Of a DNA stretch of 64,000 bases, positions 10,638-56,900 are shown piece after piece. Location of the stretch: positions 17,918,001 to 17,982,000 of the forward strand of contig NC_092347.1 of NCBI RefSeq assembly GCF_963676685.1, in the 5' to 3' direction. The stretch comes from Mytilus edulis (taxonomy: Eukaryota). Each line of letters opens with the position of its first letter. Position 1 is the stretch's first letter. Made by a program: the position numbers and the translations under genes. The notes beneath the pieces were generated by a model. The model ran no database searches, was not told where the DNA came from, and saw only the letters and a list, made by a program, of their open reading frames with translations.

Positions 10638-12621
10638 TTTTTATACGACCGCAAAATTTGAAAAAATTATCGTCGTATATTGCTATCACGTTTGCGTCGT
10701 TGTCTGCGTCGTCGTCGTCGTCCGAATACTTTTAGTTTTCGCACTCTAACTTTTGTAAAAGTGAATGGAAATCTATGAAATTTTAACACAAGGTTTATGA
10801 CCACAAAAGGAAGGTTGGTATTGATTTTGGGAGTTTTGGTCCCAACATTTTAGGAATTAGGGGCCAAAAAGGGCCCAAATAAGCATTTTCTTGGTTTTCG
10901 CACTATAACTTTAGTTTAAGTTAATAGAAATCTATGAAATTTTGACACAAGGTTTATGACCACAAAAGAACGGTTGGGATTGATTTTGGGAGTTTTGGTT
11001 TCAACAGTTTAGGAATTAGGGGCCAAAAAAGGGCCCAAATAAGCATTATTCTTGGTTTTCGCACAATAACTTTAGTTTAAGTAAATAGAAATCAATGAAA
11101 TTTAAACACAATGTTAATGACTACAAAAGGAAGGTTGGTATTGATTTTGGGAGTTTAGGTCCCAGCAGTTTAGGAATTAGGGGCCAAAAAGGGACCCAAA
11201 TAAGCATTTTTCTTGGTTTTCGCACCATAACGTTAGTATAAGTAAATAGAAATCTATGAAATTTAAACACAAGGTTTATGACCATAAAAGGAAGGTTGGT
11301 ATTGATTTTGGGAGTTTTGGTCCCAACAGAATAAGGGGCCCAAAGGGTCCAAAATTAAACTTTGTTTGATTTCATCAAAATTGAATAATTGGGGTTCTTT
11401 GATATGCCAAATCTAACTGTCATGACTGTGTATGTAGATTCTTAACTTTTGGTCCTGTTTTCAAATTGGTCTACATTAAGGTCCAAAGGGTCCAAAATTA
11501 AACTTAGTTTGATTTTGACAAAAAATGAATCAGTTAGGTTCTTTGATATGCTGAATCTAAAAATGTACTGAGATTCTTGATTATTGGCCCAGTTTTCAAG
11601 TTGGTCCAAATCGGGGTCCAAAATTAAACTTTGTTTGATTTCATCAAAAATTGAATAAATGGGGTTCTTTGATATACCAAATCTAACTGTGTATGTAGAT
11701 TCTTCATTTTTGGTCCTGTTTTCAAATTGGTCTACACTAAAGTCCAAAGGGTCCAAAATTAAACTTAGTCTGATTTTAACAAAAATTGAAATCTTGGGGT
11801 TCTTTGATATGCTGAATCCAAAAATGTACTTAGATTTTTTATTATGGGCCCAGTTTTCAAGTTGGTCCAAATCAGGATCTAAAATTATTATATTAAGTAT
11901 TGTGCAATAGCAAGTCTTTTCAATTGCACAGTATTGCGCAATGGCAAGAAATATCTAATTGCACAATATTGTGAAATAGCAAATTTTTTTTAAATTAGAG
12001 TTATCTTTCTTTGTCCAGAATAGTAAGCAAGAAATATCTAATTGCAAAATATTGTGCAATAGCAAGATTTTTTTTTAATTGGAGTTATCTTTCTTTGTCC
12101 AGAATCAACTTAAATCTTTGTTATATACAATATACAATGTATATTCACTTTTTACTACCAACTGATAAATTAAAATAATCTTTACCATTCAGTGATAACA
12201 AGCAGTTTTTTTACATCTTAATATTTTATGATGTATTTAAATGAGTAGTTATTGTTGCAAACTCCATTAGAAATTTTAATTGAGATTAGTTTTGGAATAA
12301 GGGAAAGGGGGATGTGATTAAAAAAATTGGGTTCAATTTTTCTCATTTGAAATTTCATAAATAAAAAAGAAAATTTCTTCAAACATTTTTTTGAGAGGAT
12401 TAATATTCAACAGCATAGTGAATTGCTCTAAGAGAAAACAAAAATTTTAAGTTCATTAGAACACATTCATTCTGTGTCAGAAACCTATGCTGTGTCAACT
12501 ATTTAATCACAATCCAAATTTAGAGCTAAATCCAGCTTGAATGTTGTGTCCATACTTGCCCAAACGTTCAGGGTTCAACCTCTGCGGTCGTATAAAGCTA
12601 CGCCCTGCGGAGCATCTGGTT
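10638..12621 (+). mobile_element. Non-autonomous Helentron-associated (HINE/DINE-1-like) element with internal satellite arrays
   Basis: Subterminal inverted repeats TTTATACGACCGCA (10640-10653) and TGCGGTCGTATAAA (12583-12596). It has a (GTC)n microsatellite near the 5' end, a short GC-rich 3' tail and T-rich insertion ends. Internal arrays: ~160-bp unit x~3.6 (10768-11340) and ~270-bp unit x2 (11345-11880). Confidence 0.8.
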
Positions 12622-14958: not shown

Positions 14959-16979
14959 TCTTCGTCTTAAGATTAAAATGATTTCATGTGCTGATGGCAA
15001 TTAATAGGATTACAGAATGCACATCCTCCTTTCAAAAACAACTATTAGATTTATCAACTTTTGTTGCCAGTTTGCTAATTCCTATCTTATGTGACTTATG
15101 TCAATTTCAGTATATCTTTCGATAGTTAAATGACGTTTTGTGTATTTTTTTTCAACATATTCTGGTCCAAGTAAGATATAAATTGCAGCATCAGCAGATA
15201 GTTGTGGTAGTGACAGTAGTCTTTTAAGTGTGTTTTTGTGAGGGTTTTTTTTTTTTTTTTTGGGGGGGGGGGGGGTATGTCTGGTTTTAAAAGTGTTGTT
15301 GGGAATTTCAATTTCATAAAGCATTCTTGGTGCCACAGATGTTCTTAAAAGTTTGTATGCTATCAATATATTTGTTCAATCATAATTAAAACCTACATTT
15401 AGTCTTTATTCGAACTATTTAATATTCATTAGCTATTTACTCGGAATATGTACCAACATTGCAATATCTTGCAGTCGCTTTTGATTTATTAGAAAACATC
15501 CAAACACGTACACAATGTGTTACAAGAGGTCATTATTCATAACATATACTAAATATGACAAAAATTAACATGGGATTAAATACAAATAATTTAAATATCA
15601 TTTGATAATGCGTCTTAATTTGGTTGAGGAGTATTCTAAGGTTTCTTCTAAGATTATACTCATGGGTAAAGCTGAGAATCGAACACTTAAAGTTTATATA
15701 TTCTTTTAATATTATCAAACCTTAAATAAATAGAGGCATTAACATTTTGGAAGTGGATTAATCATTAATCCTTCTAACATTTGATCTGGGATTAATTTAC
15801 ACCTGACCAATTCCATTAATTTTTGTTCTTATAAATCCTTTTCTGAAAAATTCAACTTTTTAATTTAATTTAATTAAAACGGAATTAATTAATCAGTGAA
15901 TAGGTGCAATAAACACGTAAAATAGCTTTACACTTCGGGGTTAACGACACTTTTAAATAATGGTTAATTGGATGGAGGGACAGTTATCTTACATAAATTT
16001 ATGTGTCAAATTAGTCAAATAATAGCGGTATAAAAATTGTATTGTGTTTTCGGCGGACATGACCCCTGAGCCAGACTTTTATTACACACCGAATGTTGAA
16101 ACACCATTTCAAGACTGAACCAACCTTCGTTAGTATCTCTTTAAACGTTTATTTTGTACAGTTATAATGTATTATGTAAATTTATGCAACTGTCAAAATG
16201 TTTATCCAATTACAGTACTTCAAATCTTGATTGAAAACATAGAGACCTTAAATACAAAACATTAAATATTCTGAAGTCATTTGCGATATATATTAGATAC
16301 CTTATGTTTCAAGTTGGTTTCATTACCAACTATAAATTCTAATTAACAAAACGTGACGTATTTATCTTTTCAAATATATATTTAGTTATTTTAAATTTAC
16401 AATTATGGTCTTAATTTTAAATTTGATATCTGTTATTGGAAAAAAATTCTTCACACGACTATGAATACTTAATTATTTTAAAAAATAATCTTCTGAATAC
16501 AATGGCCATTTAAGTTGGGTTAATCTCTATTAATCCATAATAAACCGTAATCCACAATAAATCCATTCGCTGTCGTCATTTAACAACAAGTTTGGTCGGA
16601 GATGTGTCAAATTAATTTTATAGGAAATATAAGTGAAAATTAAGAGGTAAGAATATTTTTACTTATTTTCATAGAACAGAAATTGAATTTCGGGCAAGAT
16701 TTTCATATGGCACCCCACCAAACTAAAAAAAAACAATAATATATTACAGTTTATTCTGTAGGGTAAAATATGAAACTCTTTCCGAATTTCGTAGAATTGG
16801 TTTCATGAAGTATTACCGGGTCAAAACCAAATGACTTCAAGATGGAAGACTTTAAAACGAGAAAACAATACAATGAAATAAATAATTATATATTTTTTCA
16901 AATACAAATATGTTTTACGAATCATAAAACTGGAAGACTTTGAAACGAGAGAATATCACAAAGAAATAAGTAATTATAC

Positions 16980-17312
16980 ATTTATTTAAATAAAAATATG
17001 TTTTACGAAACATAAGATGTGGTTTGATTGCCAATAAAATGAATAACATGGAAATGTATTTTCAAGAAGAACTTACGGTAAATAGATTCAAAATATTTAA
17101 ATAAAAATATGTTTTACGTAACATAAGATGTGGTTTGATTGCCAATAAAACGAATAACATGGAAATGTATTTTCAAGAAGAACTTACGGTAAATAGATTC
17201 AAAATATTTAAATAAAAATATATTTTACGTAACACAAGACGTGGTGTGATTGCCAATGAAACGAATAACATGAAAATGTATTTTCAAAAAGAACTTACGG
17301 TAAATAGATTCA
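16980..17312. repeat. Tandem repeat, 111-bp unit x3, preceded by a related ~87-bp duplication
   Basis: aaataaaaatatgttttacg...agatgtggtttgattgccaat...gaacttacggtaaatagattca recurs at about 16989, 17100 and 17211. Confidence 0.85.
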
Positions 17313-17778
17313 TAATGGCTTAACATATCCCTGTCTGTTTATACCACAGAACTACTGTTTGTTTTGTCACAGGGGAAAAGTAGTTAGAGGCCAGGGGCAG
17401 TGCATGTGCTTAACAAATAGCTGTTTTATTTTGTCAAACAGAAAACAGTAGGTAGAGCGCCAGAATTTTCCACCAAAAAACATGTCTAAATTTTTTCCAC
17501 CAAAAAACATGTCTAAATTATAGCCAAACTATGCAGGCACCTATAGACGAAAAGGTAAATACCAACCTTATTAAAAGATTCAAAAAGTCCATAAAATTTT
17601 ACAAAATCAAACGTGAGTCTATGTCAACTAACAGAACAAATGGAACACAACTGTCATATTCCTGACCTGGTCTTTGAAAAACAAATGTTTTTCGATTCAC
17701 GCTTAAACTTTACTGTATTCTTGACTATTCACGGTTGTAGAAACGAAGATTTTGTAGACACTTTTTTTTTACTTTCAG

Positions 17779-32290: not shown

Positions 32291-34803
32291 TGTTTAACAT
32301 GTACACATGATCAGGGACAAAAAGGTCCATTTATATCAGATGTATAAACTCTTGCTTCAGTACCTTTTTTAAAAGATCAGTTTGTATTCAGCTTCCACTT
32401 CACTAGTCAGTATAACAGCTTTTAGAGAAGATTATAATTTTAGACAATCAAAGTTTATAGAAATCTGTTTACTATTTTTGTTCTTTTAAATGTCCTTTAA
32501 TATGGCAGGTGAATTTAGGTTTACAATTAAATTTTGTTTTTGTGTTTACTTGAAAGTTCATTTCACAGAGATCAGTATTGTCACACCACTAATATTTAAC
32601 CGCTAAACTCTGTATCTGTTGAAATTCTTATCAACCCAGTTCTAAGATGATATTTTTAGTATATTTCCATTTTAAGGTTGATTTTTACAGACTATATTCA
32701 CAATGTAAAGGAGTTTGTGTTCCATAAATTACTTTAAATCATTGTTTGATATTTACTGGTACTTGGAATTTCTCAAAATAACATGCCAGATGTCTCAAGT
32801 GAACTGTTTACTTATCCCTAACCCCAATTGAGATTTTGTTGTCTTACTTAAAGAACGTTTTCAATATCAACCAGTATTGAAATCATGAAGTTAAGTATTT
32901 TTTTTTGCTAATTTTTAAATATGTTTCAGCCCATTCATCTAAAATGGGCCAATTGCATTTATAACTTTATTTGCATACACCAAACTCGTAATAATGCTCA
33001 TAAAGAATGCAATCAAAATGTTGATAATAAGGATTCATTTTGACCTAATTTGATCTAAGTATATAGGAGTTGCAATGTTTAAATTCCTGTTTAAACCATC
33101 AGATGAAGCATTTATGAATAAAAAAAATACACCAGGTATTTATTCATAACCTTTTCAGAACATGCATTTATGTCAGGAATTCATATATTCCTTTCATATA
33201 CTGGTAACTATTTTTAGAATGACATTGTTTACATACAATATGTTTTGTTTAATCTTTTGTTATTTTTTTTAATACCATACATGTATTTTCTTTTACATGA
33301 TTTTATATAGTTATCTAGAATGAAGTTTTTGAATTTATTATTATATGATCTTTACATGTGTGTCTTTTCTATCATTTGCATTTTTGCCATCTTTGTCTCA
33401 CCTTAACAAAGTTACGAAGGCAATGCTGAGATGTTTTATTTCCAGCAGCATCAACACATTGGTACAGTCATGACAGTTTATGGGATGCACTAATGCTAAT
33501 TCAACAATAATTGGTATTTAGTTGTATATGTATTGGCAAATCTCATTTTAATGAAGACTATTGACCTTGAATATTTTACATAGTTCATGTAGTTTACATG
33601 TTAGAAGGTTTGGTCATTTGCTTAATTAAGATGACCCACTTATTGTAAGACAATGATATTACCAATGATTACCATATCATTATTTCAAGAAGTTTGTTTG
33701 GCTGTGAACTTTCATTCGTGGTGTATTGGAATTGGCTTTGAATCTTTTGCATACTTTTACAAGTTTGCCGGTAAGTTTTGACAATTTAAATTTCAACATT
33801 TGCACTATCAAAGTTTCATACAGGAAAAAGATGTCTCTGTGTGAACAGTTTATAGCAGTTTATAGAGAAAACAGAGTTTGAAGAAATCTCAAAAGAATCT
33901 TGGACCCAAAACCTAAAGTGTTGGTACTCAAATAATTTTTCAGGGTAATTGAAAGGCACAAGATACTGTCAATTCAGATTTTTTTGTGTACTTTTATTTT
34001 TGCAAATTTCAAAGAAGTGATAAAGATGTGAGATGGCTTATTGTGGTTTAATTAAGTATTATAATTTTGCATACAAATAGTGCCATCAAATTTCAAAATG
34101 AGAGTTTTTATTATCAGCCACCTATTCTGACACAATTTTTCTGGATTTACAGTGCTTATAATGCCTTCATTTGATTTTTGTATATCTTTACTTTGCTTTG
34201 CATAATACCTTTTTATGTTTACTCTGTCAGTGTACTGATTAATATTAGTAAATGTTTTGTGTGATACTGGTGAAAGTATTTGTTATTTTGATATTTTTTC
34301 TATAGATTTACTATGCAAGAATGTTAAAGAAGTTGACTGGTAAAATAAATACTTTAGAAACTCTGTAAAGTGTTAGGTTTTTTTTTTGGAAATCACATCA
34401 ATAAGATTAACCTCAACACTACATTCTACACAATGACCCATTGTCATATTTTTCTGTCATGATTATTAGAAAACTAAATTGTGGATTAAAGCTTAAAGTC
34501 CCAACCTGTTTTCCTATAGGCAGTGACAATTCAACACTTCTTTTTTTTCATATCTTTTAATTGTCTTTTAACATCTGTACAATAATTTTGTATACATGAA
34601 TAAGTTTGTATTCTACATTTCTTATCTTTACATGTCAGCCAATGCAGTCATTATGCCCTCTGTTTTTGAAGTACAGCACTTTGTGATATGTTTATTTGTA
34701 TCATTTGTCCTCGACTCAACCAGTGTGGCTAAACTTGCCATGTAACCCAATGGTAACCTTACATGTAACTGCTGTTGTCTATTATGAATTAATTGTATCT
34801 TTA

Positions 34804-37800
34804 TTATGTGATAGTTTCTTGACACAAAAAAACTGGTGCATCCATTCCACTTGTCCAAACAACATAAGGAAATCCATTAAATGTCTTATCTTTTTCTAGA
34901 GGATCTTTCCAGCTTGCAACAGTAGTACCTGCACCATACTCACCCTGTAAAATCAGAAATAAAGTGGGGGAAATTCAAAAGTAATTCAAATTATGTCCAA
35001 TATTTTTGGCCTTGGAAAGTTGCATCAAGGAGGTTCAATATATACAAGATCAAATAACCACCTTGGTAGCATATACTGAACTGAGAAATGTAACAATTAT
35101 ATTGATTTCAAGAAACTGCAATATTCAATCAGAATTCCAATTATTTTAACGTTATATAATACAATATTTTGATGAATTTGTTTTTATCTGATATTTAAAC
35201 ATTTCAACAATTTAAGATCAGCTTAGGAATAATACTGTTACATCATAGCTCTACTGTTTCATGGTTTATGTATACATGTTTAAAACTGATAAAAAATACC
35301 TTCATGTTAACTGCTATTATAGAAATTTCAAAATAATCAGTGCATCTATCTTTCATATCACTGATGACAATATTACATGCTTCTTTAGGTTCCTTTCCCT
35401 AAAATAATAAAAAGTGTCAATTAATTTAAACTGTAATATATATCCACAAATTAAAACAGAATATTTAAAAAAGCAATTATGGCAAGCCCATACAGATAAC
35501 TGAATTTATCAAGAAAGTTTAAGCTTAAAAATCACATATTCTCTTAGTCAATAAACTAATGACTTCAGATGACTACCTATTTGAGTAACAGAAACTCACC
35601 TCATGAAATGTTTGACATAGCTTGAGAAAAAGATATTCATCACCACTACAACATGCTGCACCACAAACCTGTTTGTGTAACAGAACCACATGGTATGCTA
35701 GACAGAACTTTAGAATGAAATCTCCATCGCCACTACAACATGCTGCACCACCTTACTGTTTGAGTAACAGAACCACGTGGAATGCTGGACAGAACTTTAG
35801 AATGAAATCTCTATCATCACTACTACATGCTGCTGCGCACCATCAAGTTGAACCCGTTTGAGAAACTGACCCACGTGGAATGCTAGACAAACTTTAGAAT
35901 GAAATCTCCATCGCCACTACAACATGCTGCACCACCTATAGCTACCTGTTAAAGTAACTGACCCACGTGGAATGCTGGACAGAACTTTAGAATGAAATCT
36001 CCATCGCCACTACTACATGCTGCAACCTACCTGTTTAAGTAACTGAACTACGTGGAATGCTAGACAGAACTTTAGAATGAAATCTCCATCGCCACTACAA
36101 CATGCTGCACCACCTACCTGTTTGAGTAATTAAACCACGTGGAATGCTGAACTGAACTTTAGAATGAAATCTCCATCACCACTACAACATGCTGCACCAC
36201 CTACCTGTTTGAGTAACAGAACCACGAGGAATGCTGGACAGAACTTTAGAATGAAATCTCCATCGCCACTACAACATGCTGCACCACCTACCTGTTTGAG
36301 CAACAGAACCACGTGGAATGCTGGACAGAACTTTAGAATGAAATCTCCATCGCCAATACAACATGCTGCACCACCTACCTGTTTGAGTAACAGAACCACG
36401 TGGAATGCTGGACAGAACTTTAGAATGAAATCTTTATCATCACTACTACATGCTGCACCACCAACCCGTTTGAGTAACTGAACCACGTGGAATGATGGAC
36501 AGAACTTTAGAATAAAATCTCCATCGCCACTACAACATGCTGCTCCACCTACCCGTTTGAGTAACAGAACCACGTGGAATGCTGGACAGAACTTTAGATG
36601 AAATCTTCATCGCCACTACAACATGCTGCACCAACTACCTATTTAATTAACTGACCCACGTGGAATGCTAGACAGAACTTTAGAATCAAATCTCCATCGC
36701 CACTACAACATGCTGCACCACTTACCTGGTTGAGTAACTGAACCTCATGGAATGCTGGACAGAACTTTAGAATGAAATCTCAATCACCACGACAATATGC
36801 TGCACCACCTACCTGTTTGAGTAACAGAACCACGTGGAATGCTGGACAGAACTTTAGAATGAAATCTCTATCGCCACTACAACATGCTGCACCACCTACC
36901 TGTTTGAGTAACTGAACCACGTGGAATGCTGGACAGAACTTTAGAATGATATCTCTATCGCCACTACAACATGATGCACCCACCTATTTAAGTAACTGAC
37001 CCACGTGGAATGCTGGACAGAACTTTAGAATGAAATCTCCATCATCACTACTACATGCTACACCACCAACCTGTTTGAGTAACTGAACCCCGTGGAATGC
37101 TGGACAGAACTTGAGAATGAAATCTCCATCGCCATTACATCATGCTGCACTACCTACCTGTTTGAGTAACTGAACCACGTGGAATGTTGGACAGAACTTG
37201 AGAATGAAATCTCCATCGCCACTACATCATGCTGCACCACCTACTTGTTTGAGTAACAGAACCACGTGGAATGCTGGACAGAAATTTAGAATGAAATCTC
37301 CATCGCCACTACAACATGCTGCTCCACGGTCACCTACCTGTTTTAGTGACAGAACCACGTGGAATGCAGGACAGAACTTTAGAATAAAATCCCCATCACC
37401 ACTACAAAATGCTGCACCAACTACCTGTTTGAGTAACAGAACCACGTGGAATGATGGACAGAATTTTATAATGAAATCACCATCACCACTACAACATGCT
37501 GCTCCACCTACCTGTTTTAGTGACAACCACGTGGAATGCTGGACAGAACTTAAGAATGAAATCACCATCACCACTACAAAATGCTGCACCAACTACCTGT
37601 TAGAGTAACAGAACCACGTGGAATGATCGACAGAACTTTACAATGAAATCACCATCACCACTACAACATGCTGCTTCACGTACCTGTTTTAGTGATAGAA
37701 CCACGTGGAATTCTGGACAGAACTTAAGAATGAAATCACCATCACCACTACAAAATGCTGCGCCAGCTACCTGTTTGAGTGAGAGAACCACGTGGAATGA

Positions 37801-40800
37801 TGGACAGAACTTAAGAATGAAATCACCATCATCACTACAAAATGCTGCACCAACTACCTGTTTGAGTTACAGAACCACGTGAAATGATGGACAGAACTTA
37901 AGAATGAAATCACCATCACCACTACAAAATGTTGCACCAACTACCTGTTTGAGTTACAGAACCACGTGGAATGATGGACAGAACTTAAAATTAAGTCTCC
38001 ATCACCACTAAAACATGCTGCAACACCTACCTGTTTCAGTAACTGAACCACGTGGAATGCTGGACAGAACTTAAGAATGAAGTCACTATCACCACTACAA
38101 CACACTGCACCACCTACCTGTTTAAGGAACTGTACCACTTGGTATGCTGGACAGTCTTTTAGAATAAAATCGCCATCGCCACTACAACATGCTGCACCAC
38201 CTACCTGTTTGAGTAACTGAACTACGTGGAATGCTGGACAGAACTTTAGAATAAAATCTCCATCGCCAGTACAACATGCTGCACCACCAGAAACATCTGA
38301 AACCAGACAAAAACAAAGTGAATTATAGGCATTTTAAATAGGCCATAAAAAAATCTTGAAATCTGATTTTGCAGATACCGAAATACCTCTTATGAATTGT
38401 GAGTAATTATAAGCCTGAGATTATTACATGTCAGATAAATGTTCAATACGTCCTTATCTGTATTTAAACCAACCCCTTAAGAGTTATATTGTCTAGACTT
38501 ACCAGCATACAAACCATTGCCTGGAAGTGCACTGTCTCCAACTCTACCAGGATGTTTATTCGGCATCCCACTAGTTGATACGCCTAAACAAATAAAAATG
38601 GAAGGTATTCAGTACAGTGAATCTGGTGTCGACATTTCTGTACTACAGTATCAACTTCATACTACATTTAATCTTGACAGGAACTTTAAGTGTATTATTG
38701 TTCGAACGTGTATTATCTCATATAAATTTGATAATAAATCCTTGAAACGTTCAAAATTATGTCATATTTTGCTATACGAAAAAAAATATAGAAATTTTGC
38801 ATCATTACTTTTGCTTAATAAATCTGTGACATAATTTTAATATGCCTGTATATATACTTTGAATGACGATTGAAAAATTCCATCTTTAATAACGTCAACA
38901 TAAAACTAATGATACTAACCACAAGAAATGTCATCACCATCCAAAACAATCAGTCCTAGTGTATCATGACATTGGGGTGGCATTTCTCCATTAGTCTGAA
39001 AGTGATATTTATAGATTATCGTTGATCATCTCAACGAGATTGTTTTTCTCGGTTGAGCCCGTACGGCGAAAGCGAGAAAAGCAATCGAGTTGAGATGACC
39101 AAGGATAATCTGTTTATCGCTATTTTACCTATGACGACGTTGTCAATTTCACGTCAATTTCATTAGGAACGCCACGTGCCTCCTTGGTTTCTAGCGGTAA
39201 TTTTCCATCTCAAGCGAGTATCATGATATGAAAAATTATTTCAAAAAAAAGATCAAAGGAAAAATGCACAAAATAGCGATAATCTCTTATATTCCGGGTT
39301 TGGTAAAATAGAAAAGTAAAAGAGAAGAATAAAACAAAAACAAATTTCAAACACATTTCAGTTTAAAATTATAAAAAAACATGTTTACTGTAAAGGACCT
39401 TTAATATAAATACCGGTGCTCCAATTTTTTTTCCAACTTAGTTAAAATCTAAGGAATAGTACCAAAAATATATTTACATCTTCACTGGCAAGGTCAGGAT
39501 TAAACGTAAATCCTTCTTTTTCTGCAAATATTCTCGCCCCATCTGCTGTCAACATACTGTGAGTACAACGTTCCATAACACTTCTAGCCACAGAGATTGG
39601 TTTTGAAAATCTAAATAAAAAAGAAACTATAGACGAGGAGGTCCCTGATTTCCACTTCCCTATTATGCCATTTTCCGCAGGCGGAAATTTCAGTCAAAAG
39701 AATTTAAATTCAAGATATGTATTATCAAGCTCTTCTACCTTTAGAAATATGAAGATTTATACAAAATGCTAATGATGATTCACCACACTATATAGCCAAG
39801 ATGTAATAAAATTCGCTGGACCCATGAAGGGAGAAATTTATTACAGATATGTTTGCCCCCAGGATATTGTGAATCTTAAAAATTTTATTTAAGGAAACGT
39901 GCAGAAGATTTACAATTACATTAAAAAATGTGTCAGATATTGATTGCCTTTTTTGAAATTGGTTATATATACAAGATTAGATTGTAGATGTGTTTGGTTC
40001 ATTGGACACGCAAAGAGATATATTGCAATACATCGTAGAATTTTGATTAGATATGGAAGTCTACTGTTCGTATAACATAAAAAAAAAAAAACTCAACCGA
40101 CCCTTTTAGTGCAGTTACAGCTCCAAATTGCAAATGTCGTCCATTCATTACAGCGGCGTCCATTTCCAAAAATCCATGTGAATTTCTCGGTCCGCCAACG
40201 CCAACAATACAGGGACCGTACTTCATGTTTTCTTCAATGCCTATTTAAATAAGGAAAATTGTTTTATGATTCATGAAAGTCTAATTCTCCAACAAACACA
40301 CACACGCATGTATCAATGTATGTCTTATATCTCAAAACGTCAAAGGGGATTCCCAGCATGAGCAATCACGGTACGATGTGGTGACTTGCTGGTATATCAG
40401 ACCACCAAATAATCCATATCTATTCAACTAAATTTTGCAATTTTCACAGCTTTCTTAAACAAGAGTGAACACGCTGAAATGTCTCGCCTTCTTTACTAAT
40501 CATTCATATTATGTTGATAGACCTAAATATAAAGTTTTATTACAACTGTCACATAAACACAACATTAACCTAAAAAAAAACATTGATCAATGAACCATGA
40601 AAATGAGGTCAAGGTCAGAAGAACCATGCCAGGCAGACATGTACAGCTAACAATTCTTCAATACAACAAATATAGTTGACTTATTGCTTATAAATTAAGA
40701 AAAACAGACCAAAACACAAACATTTTAACACTTAGCAATGGACCGTGAAAATGAGGTCAAGGTCAAATAAAACCTGCGTAACAGACTTATAGATCATAAA

Positions 40801-43800
40801 ATATTTCCATACACCAAATATAGTTGACCAAATGCATAAAGTATTAGAAAAATAGACCAAAACTCAAAAACTTAACTTTGACCACTGAACCAAGAAAATG
40901 AGGTCAAGGTCAGTTCTATTGCTTATAGTATCTGAGATATGGACTTGACCACAAAACTTAACCTTGTTCACTGATCCATGAAATGAGGTCGAGGTCAAGT
41001 GAAAACTGTCTGACGGGCATGAGGACCTTGCAAGGTACACACATACCAAATATAGTTATCCAACTACTTATAATAAGAGAGAATTTAACATTACAAAAAC
41101 TTTTTTTTTTCAAGTAGTCACTTAACCAGGAAAATGAGGTCAAGGACATTAGACATGCGACTGACGGAAAGTTCGTAACATGAGGCATCTATATACAAAG
41201 TATGAAGCGTCCAGGTCTTCTGCCTTCTAAAATATAAAGCTTTTAAGAAGTTAGCTAACGCCGCCGCCGCCGGATCACTATCCCTATGTCGAGCTTTCTG
41301 CAACAAAAGTTGCAGGCTCGACAAAAATTACCGGAGTTTAACTTCATAAAAAACAGATATATCACAGCTGGCACTGGTTTGTATCCATAGGAAGGTCGAC
41401 TATCCATAGCTTCTATTACAATATGGATAGTCGACTTTCCCATGGATAGAAACAAGTGCCCGCTGTGAGGTATATCCTGAATTGCATTTATATACCACCT
41501 TTCAACGTCATGCCAATTTCCAATTAACCTATGTTTAAAGTCTTGCAAGAAAGAACTGTGTTTCGGAAGACAAGAACTACTAACAATAGCCCCTGGGTTT
41601 CTCAGGGGAAATAAAAAAATGTCGGAGTAGGGCTTCTTTTACCGTGATACATTCTAAATTCGAGAGAGTGAATTGGTGGTCTGACACCTACAAAGATACG
41701 CTTATTTTGATGTTATTTTCATATATTGTTCACTAGAATTGTTCATCCCTGAAAACAATAGTCGACTCCCTTAATGTGTTTACTGCCAATATACTTTTTT
41801 CGGTAATGTTATTTACATGAACCCTGTATGCAGACATAGGAAGATAAGGTATGAGTTGCAATGAGACAACTATCCACCCATGTTACAATTTGCAAAAGTA
41901 AACCATTATAGGTACGGTCTTCAAAACGGTGCTTTGGCTCACACCGAATAATCTTTATAAAAAGGATGTATGTATCCACTTTTTTTTTTAACTCATAGTC
42001 TACTAAACCAATAGAAATGTTACTATGTAGACATAGGAAGATGTAGTAAGAGTGGCAATGAGAAAGCTATCCATACATGTCACAATTTATAAAAGTAACC
42101 CATTATATATAGGTCAAAGTATGGTCTTCAAAACGGTGCTTTGACTCACACCGAATAATCTATATAAAAAGGATGTATGTATCCACTTTTTTTTAATTCA
42201 TAGTCTACTAAACCGATAGAAAACGATGTTCATGGTTTTGTTTTCGATATGGAATTGTAGTTCTGAGGGCCCTCATGGGGTTTTTGATTATGTGATTACT
42301 TGGCCGTTTTTTTAATGATTATTTGATTATTAAGCCAAATATTTCATGATTATTTGATTACCTAGGACTGTATTTTTAGTTTATGATTATTTGATTACTA
42401 AAGATAAGCAAATATTTAATGATTATGTGATTATATTGGCAAAAAAATGGTGATTATGTGATTACTAGGACCCCCCCATGAGGGGCCTCAGTTCTGTGTT
42501 CTCCAACTGTATGGAAAACATCTTTAATAAAAGCGATCATATTTATATTGTATGAATCTTGTACCATAAAAATGGAATTACACTCAAAAACAGTGTACTT
42601 ATTTAAAAATTATTCACTTTTCTCAAATTGTATACAGACTTGCTAGTTGAGCAAATTATAATTGCTATGATTTTCCCGTTATGTCTGAATCAGGAACTGG
42701 TTGTACGGTTCCTCCTTTCCTCTAAAATTTTGTTCTTGCGGTTATTTTTTAAAATTCAGTTTTCTTACTTTCTTTTATTTTATGAGTTCTTGTTTTTATT
42801 CATATAATCTTACCAAAAAAAAAATCCAGTTTTTGAGTGCTGGTCCCCTACCAGAGGGGCAGCAGATATAAATTAAAAAATCGATAAAAAGAAGGGAGTT
42901 CCATGAACCAAACGCTTCTAGTTAAATGTTTCAACAATGTATGACTTTGAAAAAATAGAACATTTTATTCAGTGTCCTAATTTCGTTGACCGACAGGTGA
43001 AATTGCTTTTTCTAAAGAAACTAAGGAACAAATATTGCCAATTAGTAAACACAGTCTGGTTTAAGTGTCAACATAGGCGGTAGGAAATCAGTAACTCGGC
43101 ATTATTTCATGTTCATTTACCCTATATATACGATTTGACATGCACTTTTTTGTCGAATTGGAAAATTTCTAAATAAGACGATTATTTGTTTTCATTTACA
43201 ATTAAAGGCCCCGAAGGACTAAAACCTGAAATGACAATAACATTAAGGATTACTAAATAAATCTTATTCAATAAAATATGATATACATATATACACATAT
43301 GGGGGTTGCAATCTTTTCATTACATATTTTAATAAATGGCTCGCCGCTTTTGGTTTAAGAAATAAACTCATCATAGATACCAGAACTGATGTATTTGCGC
43401 CAGACGCGCGTTTCGTCTACAAAAGACTCACCAGTGACGCTCGAATCTAAAAAAAGGTAAATAGGCCAAATAAAGTACAAAGTTGAAGAGCACTGAAGTC
43501 AAGTATTGAAAAGTATTGCCAAATACATTATAATTATTGCATTTTAAAACTTTCATAAAAACTAGATATAAAACTAAGAAGATGCGGCAGAATTATGATT
43601 GCCACTGAGATACATATACCAATCAGAGACCAAACTGGCAAATGATCGACATACAGATGTCTTCAGTAAGTTTATTTTCGGGTAAAATTAAGTCCTTTAC
43701 AAATTTGGATTAAAAACCTCCAAGACCGCGCCGGATTATCAGGCTGAAGTTAAACAAATGTCCTTGTCCCTTGTTGTCTCCGTTACATAAATAGGTTGTT

Positions 43801-48114: not shown

Positions 48115-48501
48115 GCATCTGGTGCAAGAAAATTGGGACCGTTAATTTAATTACTACCACTGGGTCGATGCCTCTGCTGGTGGACTATTAGTCCCCGGGG
48201 GTATCACCAGCCCAGTAGCCAGTACTTCGGTACTGGCATGAAGTACGGATTTTTTGTGTTATTAAAATTTGCTGTTACAAAATATTAGAAATTATTATAA
48301 ATTAAGGAATGTATCTCCCTCATGCAAAGCTCTGATTCCTTTCACGGATTTGGTTATACTTTTTGGACCTTTTGGATTATAGCTCTTCATCTTTTATATA
48401 AACTTTGGATTTCAAATATTTTGGCCACGAGCATCACTGAAGAGACATGTATTGTCGAAATGCGCATTTGGTGCAAGAAAATTGGGACCGTTAATTTAAT
48501 T
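48115..48501 (+). mobile_element. Non-LTR retrozyme-like monomer (349-nt unit with ~37-bp terminal direct repeat)
   Basis: gcat(c/t)tggtgcaagaaaattgggaccgttaatttaatt occurs at 48115-48152 and 48464-48501. It contains a complete hammerhead and interrupts a SINE-like repeat spanning ~47990-48635. Confidence 0.75.
48431..48474 (+). ncRNA. Type I hammerhead ribozyme
   Basis: Stem I gcatca/tggtgc; core CTGAAGA (48437-48443); stem II GACA-tgtat-TGTC; GAA; palindromic stem III ATGCGCAT; NUH triplet AUU with predicted cleavage after 48468. Confidence 0.8.
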
Positions 48502-53900: not shown

Positions 53901-56900
53901 GATCTATAAACACATCACCATCATCAAAACACAATTTTGTCATGAATCCATCTGTGTCCTTTGTTTAATACATGTATGCACATAGACCAAGGTGAGCGAC
54001 ACAGGCTCTTAAGAGTCTCTATTTTTTTTTTCTTCTAAATTTTATGTTATATTTTTTTCAGCATGACGAATATTTATGCAGTGGACATCGATTACCTCGA
54101 GGAGATACATACATAGGTAGGTACTGGTGAACTACACATGTGCAAACTACATATATTTCATCAACACTTGATTTGCATAAACACAATATTAATGTTATAC
54201 TTATTTAATTAACATTACACAGGAGACAAAATAACTCATTCTTAGATATTCGTATTAATGTACAAATGTAATAACATCACTGCCCAAGGTTAGGGTGATG
54301 GTTGACATTTTATTATTAAGTAGCAATCTAAGATGAAGTTTTAACCTCTTAAATTATCTAGATGTATACAGTGATTTGTGTAGTTATTTGACTGCTACGA
54401 TTTTCCAATACAAAAAAAACTACTGTCGTAATATTTTCCAATACAAAAAAACTACTGTGGTAATATTTTCCAATACAAAAAAACTACTGTGGTAATATTT
54501 TCCAATACAAAAAAACTACTGTGGTAATATTTTCCAATACAAAAAAACAACTGTTGTAATATTTCAGTTCATTGCTTGTCTTTCTGTGGATTTATAACTA
54601 TTAGATACTGTAATAGTCTTTTTGCACTTATTCTATAATTGATTTCCACCTCTATTGGTTTTATGAAAATAAGACATATACAGATTCTTTATTCCTCAAA
54701 CACCATATAGTTACAATGGTACAAAGAACTTCTTTAAAAAGTATAACATATAACATAAACACAAATAACATGATATATAAAGGTTAAGAATAATTATATT
54801 ACTATAAGTTTTTATTAAAGAAATTGTAGCGGGTTTGTTAGGAATCTCAATAAGTTTTCTCCTTCTAATCAATACTTCATTATCATAAATTGGTTAGAGA
54901 GTAGTGATAAATAATCTGTGTTGACGAAGGTGATGTAAATGACAAATTCACAATGGTAATTAAATTCATCAGATATTTGACTCAGTATTGATAGCTATAA
55001 CCAGATGGTATTGATGGGAGTAAGATAAACGTTGACAGAAATAGAAACTAATGTCTTCTGCATTAAAAAATTAAATTATATTTATTTTATCATTCTGTTT
55101 TACATCATTTGATCAAATCTACTAAAGATTGATCAAGAAAGCGATAAATGATCTATTCACCTGGACAAATTGTTAAAGTCAAAAAATCTGATCAATTCTA
55201 CAAATGTCAGGGGTTAATTTCCAAGATACAGGAAATGGTGTTTTCTTTTGGAAATGATTTTAGAGCAATGGTCCTTCCTTTTAGGAAAGTTGTCACAATT
55301 CCAGCTATTTTATTGATTAAGAATTGGAAAGTCAGGCGTTCTGTCTCTATAGACATGAATAATGGTGATAGATGCTGGAATAATCTGTCGTAGCTCATTC
55401 CACTTAAATCTGGAGAGTTCAGATTGCTCAGAACATTTTTGTAATGTGCAATATATTTTAGTCATGTTCTTCGAATTCTTCATATTTAGTCCCAATTTTA
55501 CAAATTTATGTTTTTAATTTTTTGGGTAAATTTTTACTTTTATTCCAAGAAAGTAAAGATTCAACCCCAAACTTCTGTTAAAAAATAAATTTCAGAATAA
55601 TCAATAAGTCAAATGATATACTTGTTTTTCAAAATCTGTGGAAATCTTTTATTGATAATTTAACTCTTTTCATACATGTATATACATTTGAGAGTTTAAT
55701 ATTCCATCCACTTAATATATTTCATTTGAGGAACTAGTAGAAATGTAATACACCATGGCTACTTTAGTCTCTATACATGTTTAAGATGTAGTTTCCTGTC
55801 AGTAACTGAGACATCTTTGGGCATGTCTTTCTTCTGTTTATTAGATTAAAAATACATCTTCTAGTAAAACCAGATACTCTAATAATGTTTTATTGTTAAT
55901 GAAATAATCTGAGGCTGCATATGTTCAAATGAACCATACATTGAAACAGAACATATAACAGCTTCCCTTCTTAAGACACTAATGTAGAATCTAAATAAGA
56001 AAATATACAGGTTCATTTTGCAATTGATGTGACTGATTTAAACCAATACATTGACCACCTAAAAAACCACATACATATATGGGGTGTTTTTTATAGGAAT
56101 GGCTCTTATATTTTTATGAACTCACTAGTTATGTTCAATGACATTGTTTACAAATAATCAAATTAAGAAATAAGCTGTTCAGAAACATGTGATAGCAGCA
56201 TGACCAGGGGACTAACGATTTTGGTTACATTGTGTACTTTGTAAAACATTTGATAAACTCCTTTTCAATTTTGCTTAGCTGCTATTAGATGTATTTTAAA
56301 TACACTTGTATTTTTTTCCTCGTTAATTACAAATTAATCTCAAATTGTTTTTCAACTTTGATAAAAATCCCCTTGTTTTTACCTAAACAGAAAACATAAT
56401 TTTTACATGGTTTGATTTTTTCCCCTGATTATTGAACTTTTAATGCGATACTGAATAGATATGCTAGAGTCATATAGATTGTAATTACGTGCAGGAAAAT
56501 AATCATATTAATAACATGGACTGTAAGATTGATGATGCATAATGTTATGTATATAGAAATTGGAAATCATAGATTGTAGAGATATAAATAATAACTTTGT
56601 GTCAATATCTTCACTTCCTTAATCACAGAACATGGTAATTCTTAGCATGATTTTGTGGTATTCACAGTTATGAAATCTTGTTGCCTAAGGAGATGTTTGC
56701 CAATTTGCGTAAACATATTTATTGGAGAGAAAAAACAAAAATATACATATTTTCCAATTGAAATGACAAGATAAATGTCTAGCATTAATTATTCAACAGC
56801 ACAAACCCCATTCATTGTATATATAATGTTATATAAACAGAGAGTAAAATGGTGGTCACAATAGACTCCAAATCATATTCATGTAAATGAACTTAAATTT

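What the first reader, a model, noticed from the sequence alone, without database searches (positions are those of the whole stretch)
35573..38296. An intron built from ~30 tandem copies of the preceding exon plus its own splice donor
Seen: exon 6 of the asparaginase-like gene (38296-38205, -) is followed directly by about 30 copies of an 87-bp unit. Each unit is the last 83 nt of that exon plus GTAG, so most junctions recreate CAG|GTAGGT or a close variant. Because 87 nt is 29 codons, the frame is preserved: the second and third donors (exon ends 38118 and 38031) are reached with no stop or frameshift and would add 29 or 58 aa (VGGAACCSGDGD...LKQ). The third extra copy has a 1-nt deletion. 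Each junction also offers AG|GTGGT in the same phase (1) as the real acceptor, so a unit could in principle be spliced as an alternative exon 6. Established: tandem duplication of AGGT-containing exonic DNA is a proposed route to new introns and splice sites. Inference: this is a natural ladder of near-identical competing donors that must either be silenced or generate length/sequence variants in an active-site segment of the enzyme.
Basis: partly seen in the sequence, partly recalled or inferred. Interest (0 to 1): 0.82.

Follow-up and report, generated by a model that had tools for sequence, protein, structure and literature searches.

The report
Splice-donor minisatellite in mussel AGA intron
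An intron of a mussel aspartylglucosaminidase-like gene is filled with about 30 decaying tandem copies of the preceding exon's end plus its splice signal, a repeat type already known from human F7 and amphioxus, and the assembled RNA available uses only the first, authentic signal.

Summary
Exon 6 (38296-38205, minus strand) of an Asparaginase_2/aspartylglucosaminidase-like gene is followed by 30 more copies of an 87-bp unit. The unit is the last 83 nt of the exon plus GTAG. The array makes up about 94% of a 2,806-nt intron. Twelve copies repeat the authentic donor CAG|GTAGGT exactly, and one is a perfect CAG|GTAAGT.

- The intron is older than the array. A paralog has an intron at the same codon, and a fragment from another bivalve reads on into an apparent intron (GT) after the homologous Gln codon. 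The acceptor side is 174 nt of unique sequence.
- Assembled RNA contigs from three studies all join 38205 to 35398. No other joint touches the array.
- The copies look like decaying pseudo-exons. Fourteen of 30 carry stops or frameshifts, and their internal acceptors are pyrimidine-poor.

This is a known kind of repeat: a minisatellite whose first unit spans an exon-intron boundary. Examples are human F7, IFI6, CBS, LMNB2 and PDGFA, and the amphioxus "mirages". The scan has already noted many such arrays in other genes of this same mussel genome.

Two things are particular to this one. The unit is nearly a whole exon and stays in frame. The copies also keep an ancestral Ser codon where the live exon now has Thr in the TGxGD active-site motif.

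Contigs cannot exclude rare use of the decoy donors.

The parts
38503..38583 (-). Exon 5 of the AGA-like gene (GVSTSGMPNKHPGRVGDSALPGNGLYA); donor CTG|GTAAGT
   Evidence: RNA joints 38296|38503 and 38582|38919 (cut +1) in X18, X19 and X15; PF01112 match of 29.2 bits; sequence
38205..38296 (-). Exon 6, 92 nt, phase 1 to 0 (DVSGGAACCTGDGDFILKFCPAFHVVQLLKQ). It encodes the TGxGD active-site motif. Its last 83 nt are unit 0 of the array. Authentic donor CAG|GTAGGT.
   Evidence: alignment to human aspartylglucosaminidase 1apy_B 46-72
35399..38204 (-). Intron 6, 2,806 nt, GT..AG, removed as one piece in all RNA contigs
   Evidence: Joint 'skips 2806', CT..AC on the + strand, in X18, X19 and X15
35568..38200 (-). 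30 extra 87-bp units (u01-u30). Edge units are diverged (about 81-82% within u01-03 and within u26-30); interior blocks u04-10 and u11-25 are homogenised (about 90%). 14 of 30 carry stops or frameshifts.
38027..38200 (-). Units u01 and u02: intact, in-frame copies ending in CAG|GTAGGT (decoy donors at exon ends 38118 and 38031). Using them would add 29 or 58 aa.
   Evidence: no RNA contig lies on 38003-38163
36718..36729 (-). Decoy donor with full consensus, CAG|GTAAGT (exon end would be 36726); stronger on paper than the authentic donor, yet no joint is seen there
35399..35572 (-). Unique 3' tail of the intron with pyrimidine tract and acceptor (ttttattattttag|GG). The remnant of the original short intron; it follows ...AATAG GTAG TCATCTG.
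35300..35398 (-). Exon 7 (GKEPKEACNIVISDMKDRCTDYFEISIIAVNMK)
   Evidence: Joints 35397|38204 and 34943|35299 (cut +1) in three RNA runs

Best explanation
This is a junction-spanning ('mirage' or F7-IVS7 type) intronic minisatellite. An 87-bp segment running from nt 10 of exon 6 to nt 4 of the following, already existing, phase-0 intron was duplicated in tandem. Slippage or unequal exchange then amplified it to about 30 copies, which expanded the intron from about 180 nt to 2,806 nt. The copies are pseudo-exons that decay roughly neutrally and are homogenised in the interior of the array but not at its edges. Although 12 copies carry a donor identical to the authentic one and one carries a better one, the spliceosome pairs the exon 6 acceptor with the first donor downstream. 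The whole array is then removed with the intron and the normal enzyme is made. The array, the intron's age and the dominant junction are shown by the data. Inferred from the human F7 work: the first donor wins by position (5'-to-3' first-come selection or exon definition), not because the others are repressed.
For: Array anatomy. The unit occurs only at this locus in the genome.

Dominant junction: contigs of three RNA runs from three studies join 38205|35398. The true RNA-Seq runs X18 and X19 have no depth anywhere in the array, and none of the three has depth on units 1-2.

The array is real: DNA run X5 (another species label) and sample X15 carry unit-specific sequence with 0-2 mismatches.

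The intron is older than the array: the C3 paralog has an intron at the same codon and phase. A Logan ORF from another bivalve reads LISQ and then on into V..., which fits a GT donor there. The acceptor half of the intron is unique sequence.

Decay of the copies: 14 of 30 units have stops or frameshifts. Unique substitutions by codon position are 20/29/34, not different from uniform (p=0.21). Stops occur at or above the neutral expectation, 5 against 3.

Weak internal acceptors: 9.5 pyrimidines in 20, against 12-17 for this gene's real acceptors.

Array dynamics: identity is 0.90 within the interior blocks and about 0.81-0.82 within the edge blocks, as described for amphioxus mirages (PMC3087553).

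Precedent for use of the first donor only: F7, LMNB2 and PDGFA (PMC1557585).
Against: All RNA evidence is assembled contigs, which drop rare variants. Minor use of decoy donors cannot be excluded, least of all products with premature stops that are degraded.

Unique substitutions show a mild excess of synonymous changes (28 against 19 expected, p=0.02). This was not corrected for transition bias and could hint at some past coding constraint.

Run X15 (RNA by guess only) has contigs inside the array at depths of 2-9. I read these as pre-mRNA or genomic DNA background, because non-repeat intron is also covered at 2-3. That is not proven.

Copy number and length polymorphism were not verified with long reads.
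Confidence: 0.8

Rival explanations
1. The decoy donors are used at a low level. Donors 2 and 3 would give in-frame +29 or +58 aa isoforms that duplicate the oxyanion-loop segment. Deeper donors would give transcripts with premature stops that are removed by NMD. Either could be splicing noise or a means of down-regulating the enzyme.
For: Donors at 38118 and 38031 have the same 9-mer as the authentic one and are reached in frame. In human IFI6 and CBS the first two pseudo-sites of comparable arrays are used constitutively (PMC1557585). Contigs cannot show absence.
Against: No joint, loose end or contig among those listed supports it in the three RNA runs (one search left 41 further loose ends unlisted), and depth on 38003-38163 is zero. 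In F7, LMNB2 and PDGFA only the first site is used.
Confidence: 0.12
2. The array is removed stepwise by recursive splicing. Each unit end, ...AAACAG|GTAGGT, juxtaposes an acceptor-like AG with a regenerated donor (a zero-length-exon ratchet point), and the final mRNA is identical to the canonical one.
For: The motif is present at most junctions. The final product would be the observed junction.
Against: The pyrimidine content before these AGs is low, 10.4 in 20. The intron is only 2.8 kb, far below the sizes at which recursive splicing is known to matter (my own knowledge, not checked here). No intermediate is seen, and none could be seen in contigs.
Confidence: 0.04
3. Units act as alternative or mutually exclusive versions of exon 6: exon 5 joins to AG|GTGGTG of unit n, and that unit's donor joins to exon 7.
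For: The phase is compatible, and 16 of 30 units are open in the exon frame.
Against: Units abut without any intron between them. Internal acceptors are pyrimidine-poor and 9 of 30 lack the AG. All RNA contigs carry the exon 6 sequence proper, joined 38503|38296. Nearly half of the units are broken.
Confidence: 0.02
4. The length of the array is an assembly artefact.
For: No read spanning the 2.7 kb was examined. In X5 two bins of the array have no contigs.
Against: The units differ from one another by about 10-18% and have private indels, the opposite of a collapsed or stuttered assembly. Unit-specific stretches recur with 0-2 mismatches in independent runs.
Confidence: 0.03

Closest known systems
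Human F7 IVS7 37-bp VNTR, and the like in IFI6 (6-16), CBS IVS13, LMNB2 (100 bp x 10-15) and PDGFA intron 4 (81 bp x 16-18), as listed in Borensztajn et al. 2006, PMC1557585
   Same: The first monomer spans the exon-intron boundary, so the authentic donor is followed by many identical pseudo-donors. In F7, LMNB2 and PDGFA only the most upstream site is used, as in the contigs here. Unit size (87 bp) and copy number (about 30) are in the range of LMNB2 and PDGFA.
   Different: In F7 the unit holds 4 nt of exon and 33 nt of intron. Here it holds 83 nt of exon (90% of the exon) and only 4 nt of intron, and its length is a multiple of three, so the first two decoys would give in-frame insertions. 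The host is a bivalve. No mutational test of donor choice was done here.
Amphioxus 'mirage' minisatellites (Adh3, and globins BflGb6 and BflGb9; Ebner et al. 2010, PMC3087553)
   Same: Tandem duplications of exon-intron boundaries with large exonic parts (150-160 bp units). Regular splicing is undisturbed. Interior units are homogenised and edge units excluded, the pattern seen here.
   Different: Far more copies here (30, against 1-6 in the globins). Length or somatic instability was not tested here.
Intron gain by tandem duplication of an AGGT-containing exon segment (Rogers model; Hellsten et al. 2011, PMC3265369; potato RdRp, PMC4974935)
   Same: A tandem duplication includes exonic sequence next to a splice signal.
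   Different: No new intron was made. The intron position is shared with a paralog, and the acceptor is not part of the duplicated unit.

Membership tests
Junction-spanning intronic minisatellite ('mirage' / F7-IVS7 type) | Head-to-tail tandem array of a 10-200 bp unit inside an intron | tested here: met
   Period 87, 30.3 copies, 87% matches; it lies within the intron defined by RNA joints
Junction-spanning intronic minisatellite ('mirage' / F7-IVS7 type) | The first unit spans the exon-intron boundary, so the authentic 5' splice site is reiterated | tested here: met
   Unit 0 is exon 6 nt 10-92 plus GTAG. 25 decoys match the consensus at 7 or more of 9 positions, and 12 are identical to the authentic 9-mer.
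Junction-spanning intronic minisatellite ('mirage' / F7-IVS7 type) | Normal splicing from the most upstream donor; pseudo-sites silent or nearly so | tested here: met
   Only the 38205|35398 joint in contigs of X18, X19 and X15. Sensitivity is limited to what was assembled.
Junction-spanning intronic minisatellite ('mirage' / F7-IVS7 type) | Concerted evolution in the interior and diverged edge units | tested here: met
   Within-block identity is 0.90 for u04-10 and u11-25, and 0.81-0.82 for u01-03 and u26-30
Junction-spanning intronic minisatellite ('mirage' / F7-IVS7 type) | Length polymorphism between alleles or individuals | not testable with these tools
   Only short-read contigs could be laid and the single read-laying run is used. 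No second haplotype copy was found in the assembly.
Intron created by tandem duplication (AGGT model) | The intron is absent at that position in relatives that lack the duplication | tested here: not met
   The C3 paralog has an intron at the same codon and phase. A Logan fragment from another bivalve reads LISQ and then on into V..., which fits a GT donor and an intron there.
Intron created by tandem duplication (AGGT model) | Donor and acceptor both derive from the two copies of the duplicated segment | tested here: not met
   The acceptor and its pyrimidine tract lie in 174 nt of unique sequence, 35399-35572
Recursive-splicing ratchet sites | A strong 3' splice site (pyrimidine tract plus AG) directly followed by a 5' splice site, with stepwise lariats | tested here: inconclusive
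   The AG|GTAGGT motif is present but the pyrimidine tract is weak, 10.4 in 20. Lariats are not testable here.
Asparaginase_2 (PF01112) / aspartylglucosaminidase-like Ntn hydrolase (the host gene) | Exons match the family profile; nucleophile Thr in HDTLG; TGxGD motif | tested here: met
   Exon-wise PF01112 matches at C4:17956501-17956587, C4:17957505-17957636 and others. HDTLG is in exon 4. Exon 6 aligns to 1apy_B 46-72. Mollusc orthologs are named N(4)-(beta-N-acetylglucosaminyl)-L-asparaginase-like.

The most novel reading that the evidence does not exclude
The ladder is not fully silent. A small share of transcripts would use donors 2 or 3, giving enzyme variants with a duplicated oxyanion-loop segment (+29 or +58 aa). 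Others would use deeper donors that end in premature stops, so that array length would tune the output of the enzyme through NMD. Because earlier notes of this scan report many such donor-anchored arrays in this mussel genome, a shared process that seeds minisatellites at 5' splice sites would be the more interesting general reading.
Probability: 0.1. Interest if true: 0.5.

Novelty: new member of a known kind. Interest (0 to 1): 0.22.

Why it matters
On its own this is one more example of a known repeat type, apparently harmless to the gene, so its value is modest.

It could still serve as a natural test bed for 5' splice site choice outside vertebrates. It offers 12 identical decoy donors and one stronger one, spaced 87 nt apart, with the first two in frame. 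The array also dates and records the exon's past: the copies keep the ancestral Ser codon of the mollusc CCSGDGD motif, while the live exon now has Thr.

If the scan's earlier notes hold, such arrays are unusually common in this genome. That frequency would deserve a genome-wide study more than any single locus does.

Tried and rejected
- **Word-based protein search** with the 158-aa open frame of the array. It found no protein carrying more than one unit, only single-exon matches to mollusc AGA-like proteins and one Logan fragment. The search sees only proteins of 87-276 aa, so full-length isoforms were out of reach.
- **Exact-pattern scan of metagenome contigs** with a 32-nt junction motif: no match.
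- **Zhuo et al. 2007** (PNAS, tandem arrays as a source of human introns): not held in the library, so it is cited only through a reference list.
- **Literature searches for the AGA Thr257/Gly258 role** gave nothing specific. The oxyanion-hole role of the Thr and Gly is taken from a review of Class 2 asparaginases (PMC8256714). Mapping it onto the TGxGD motif is my inference.
- **Coding-constraint test on the units**. The crude pN/pS of 0.55 is inflated by shared ancestry. Counts of unique events show no codon-position effect and only a mild synonymous excess. I do not read this as selection.
- **Reads.** The runs laid were held as contigs, not raw reads, so starts, levels and rare junctions could not be measured.
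- **Assembly-artefact and alternative-exon readings** were considered and rejected on the evidence given under the rival explanations.
Full report
**What is there.**
Tandem Repeats Finder reports a single array at 35638-38288 with period 87, 30.3 copies and 87% matches. Reading the minus strand and cutting at a conserved anchor gives 31 units. Unit 0 is the last 83 nt of exon 6 (38296-38205) plus the first four intron bases, GTAG. Units u01-u30 follow without a gap down to about 35568. After the last, degenerate unit comes 174 nt of unique sequence that ends in the pyrimidine tract and acceptor of exon 7 (35398). The unit DNA is found nowhere else in the 1.37-Gb genome.

**The host gene.**
Exon-by-exon matches to Pfam Asparaginase_2 identify a mollusc aspartylglucosaminidase-like Ntn hydrolase. 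So do the HDTLG nucleophile motif in exon 4 and the alignment of exon 6 to human aspartylglucosaminidase 1apy_B residues 46-72. Named relatives occur in Pomacea, Crassostrea virginica and Pinctada. Exon 6 carries the TGxGD motif. In Class 2 asparaginases a Thr and a Gly form the oxyanion hole (PMC8256714); assigning them to this motif is my inference. Run labels say mollusc, and earlier notes of the scan call the genome a Mytilus mussel. I did not verify the species.

**Which donor is used.**
The single read-laying run put Logan contigs of three RNA runs from three studies, plus one DNA run of another species label (X5), on 34300-39100. The RNA runs were X18 and X19 (RNA-Seq) and X15 (RNA by guess).
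- All three RNA runs contain one spliced contig that joins 38583-38503, 38296-38205, 35398-35300 and the last exon.
- The joint across the array 'skips 2806' with GT..AG ends on the minus strand, that is 38205|35398.
- No other joint touches the array.
- X18 and X19 have no depth anywhere inside the array, and none of the three covers units 1-2 (38003-38163).
- X15 has a few contigs inside the array at depth 2-9. It also covers non-repeat intron at depth 2-3, so I read these as pre-mRNA or genomic DNA background.
- Contigs show presence, not absence. Rare or NMD-degraded isoforms remain possible.

**Is the array real.**
The units differ from each other by 10-18% and carry private indels, which an assembly stutter would not produce. 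X5 has contigs with 0-2 mismatches at 36100-36208, 36569-36717, 37121-37217 and 37572-37710. X15 has contigs at 35782-35919 and 37110-37226. The total length was not checked by spanning reads.

**Did the duplication make the intron? It did not.**
The Asparaginase_2 paralog on C3 has a phase-0 intron at the same codon (TLLEQ|gtaaaa ... cag|GKSVQEA, against QLLKQ|gtaggt ... tag|GKEPKEA). A Logan ORF from another bivalve reads ...HLISQ and then on into V..., which fits a GT donor and an intron there. The acceptor half of the intron is not part of the repeat. The simplest history is an intron of about 180 nt that began GTAGTCATCTG..., into which the 87-bp segment (exon nt 10-92 plus GTAG) was duplicated and then amplified. 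The array is now 94% of the intron.

**State of the copies.**
- Twelve decoys repeat the authentic 9-mer CAG|GTAGGT. One (exon end 36726) is the full consensus CAG|GTAAGT. Twenty-five match the consensus at 7 or more of 9 positions. The donor 9-mer therefore does not explain why the first site wins.
- The GT columns are neither destroyed nor specially kept: 1-2 changes per column against a mean of 2.3.
- Fourteen of 30 units have a stop or frameshift in the exon frame.
- Unique substitution events fall 20/29/34 on codon positions 1/2/3, not different from uniform (p=0.21). Stops are at or above expectation, 5 against 3. There is a mild synonymous excess (28 against 19, p=0.02), not corrected for transition bias.
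- The AG in front of each unit has 9.5 pyrimidines in the 20 nt upstream, against 12-17 for the gene's real acceptors, and 9 of 30 units lack the AG. Use of a unit as a cassette exon is therefore unlikely.
- Edge units are the most diverged (about 0.81-0.82 within u01-03 and within u26-30). Interior blocks u04-10 and u11-25 are 0.90 alike, and lag-2 identity in u04-11 hints at a 174-bp dimer. This is the usual turnover pattern of a minisatellite.

**A small bonus.**
Almost all units have AGT (Ser) where exon 6 has ACT (Thr) in CC[S/T]GDGD. Pomacea, C. virginica and Pinctada orthologs all have CCSGDGD. By parsimony the array preserves the ancestral exon, and the live exon changed Ser to Thr after the founding duplication. 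The exon differs from the array consensus at 4 of 83 positions. That is similar to the mean divergence of units from their consensus, about 8%, so the array is old. This fits its presence under several species labels.

**Comparison with what is known.**
Borensztajn et al. [quoted passage not shown] Their examples:
- F7 IVS7: 37 bp, 5-9 copies.
- IFI6: 25 pseudo-sites.
- CBS: 15-20 repeats.
- LMNB2: 100 bp, 10-15 copies.
- PDGFA: 81 bp, 16-18 copies.

In F7, LMNB2 and PDGFA only the first donor is used. In IFI6 and CBS the first two pseudo-sites are also used. Their mutational work argues for 5'-to-3' selection of the first competent donor rather than repression of the others. Ebner et al. 2010 (PMC3087553) describe amphioxus 'mirages' with large exonic parts, undisturbed splicing and edge-excluded homogenisation. 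The intron-gain-by-duplication model (PMC3265369 and PMC4974935) does not apply here, for the reasons given above.

Earlier notes of this scan list several other donor-anchored arrays in this same genome (DPM1, ASCC3, an Sp gene, protease genes), followed up with the same verdict. I took the term 'mirage' from them and checked the paper. I had found the F7 paper independently.

**Verdict.**
It is a new member of a known kind and of low to moderate interest. It stands out only because the unit is nearly a whole exon and in frame, and because it preserves the exon's ancestral state.

**Limits.**
Only contigs were laid, so there is no sensitivity to rare isoforms. One metagenome pattern scan found nothing.

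Noticed in passing
window 39003-39150 (minus strand): A palindromic MITE-like element of about 148 nt. It folds into a hairpin (dG -28.5 kcal/mol, z -7.4) and has at least 2,526 first-look candidates in the genome; the 40 scored are about 95% identical. Contig depth there is in the hundreds to tens of thousands in all runs. The element ends 7 nt upstream of the AG acceptor of exon 4 (38995), so the branch point and pyrimidine tract of that acceptor lie in or at the edge of the insertion. Even so, the exon is spliced normally in the RNA contigs.
   Followed up: partly
window 38269 (codon ACT in exon 6) against the same column of units u01-u30: The array copies keep AGT (Ser), as in the Pomacea, Crassostrea and Pinctada orthologs (CCSGDGD). 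The live exon has ACT (Thr), the residue of canonical aspartylglucosaminidases. The intron array is thus a fossil of the ancestral exon sequence.
   Followed up: partly
G000:C8:25.74-25.79 Mb; C3:54.909-54.915 Mb; C3:63.84 Mb; C105: The genome holds several other Asparaginase_2 genes. C8 has a tandem cluster whose members have a different exon structure: RVGDS...RFLPS is a single exon with a donor after FLPS. C3 has an ASRGL1-like gene that shares the intron position after LLEQ.
   Followed up: partly
window 48115-48501: Another first-stage note on this window reports a 349-nt retrozyme-like unit with a hammerhead ribozyme. I did not examine it.
   Followed up: no
window 10735-11887, 16843-17316, 40579-40912, 41827-42222, 54400-54564: Other, shorter tandem repeats in the window, with periods of 32-261 and 2-5 copies. 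I did not check whether any of them abuts an exon.
   Followed up: no
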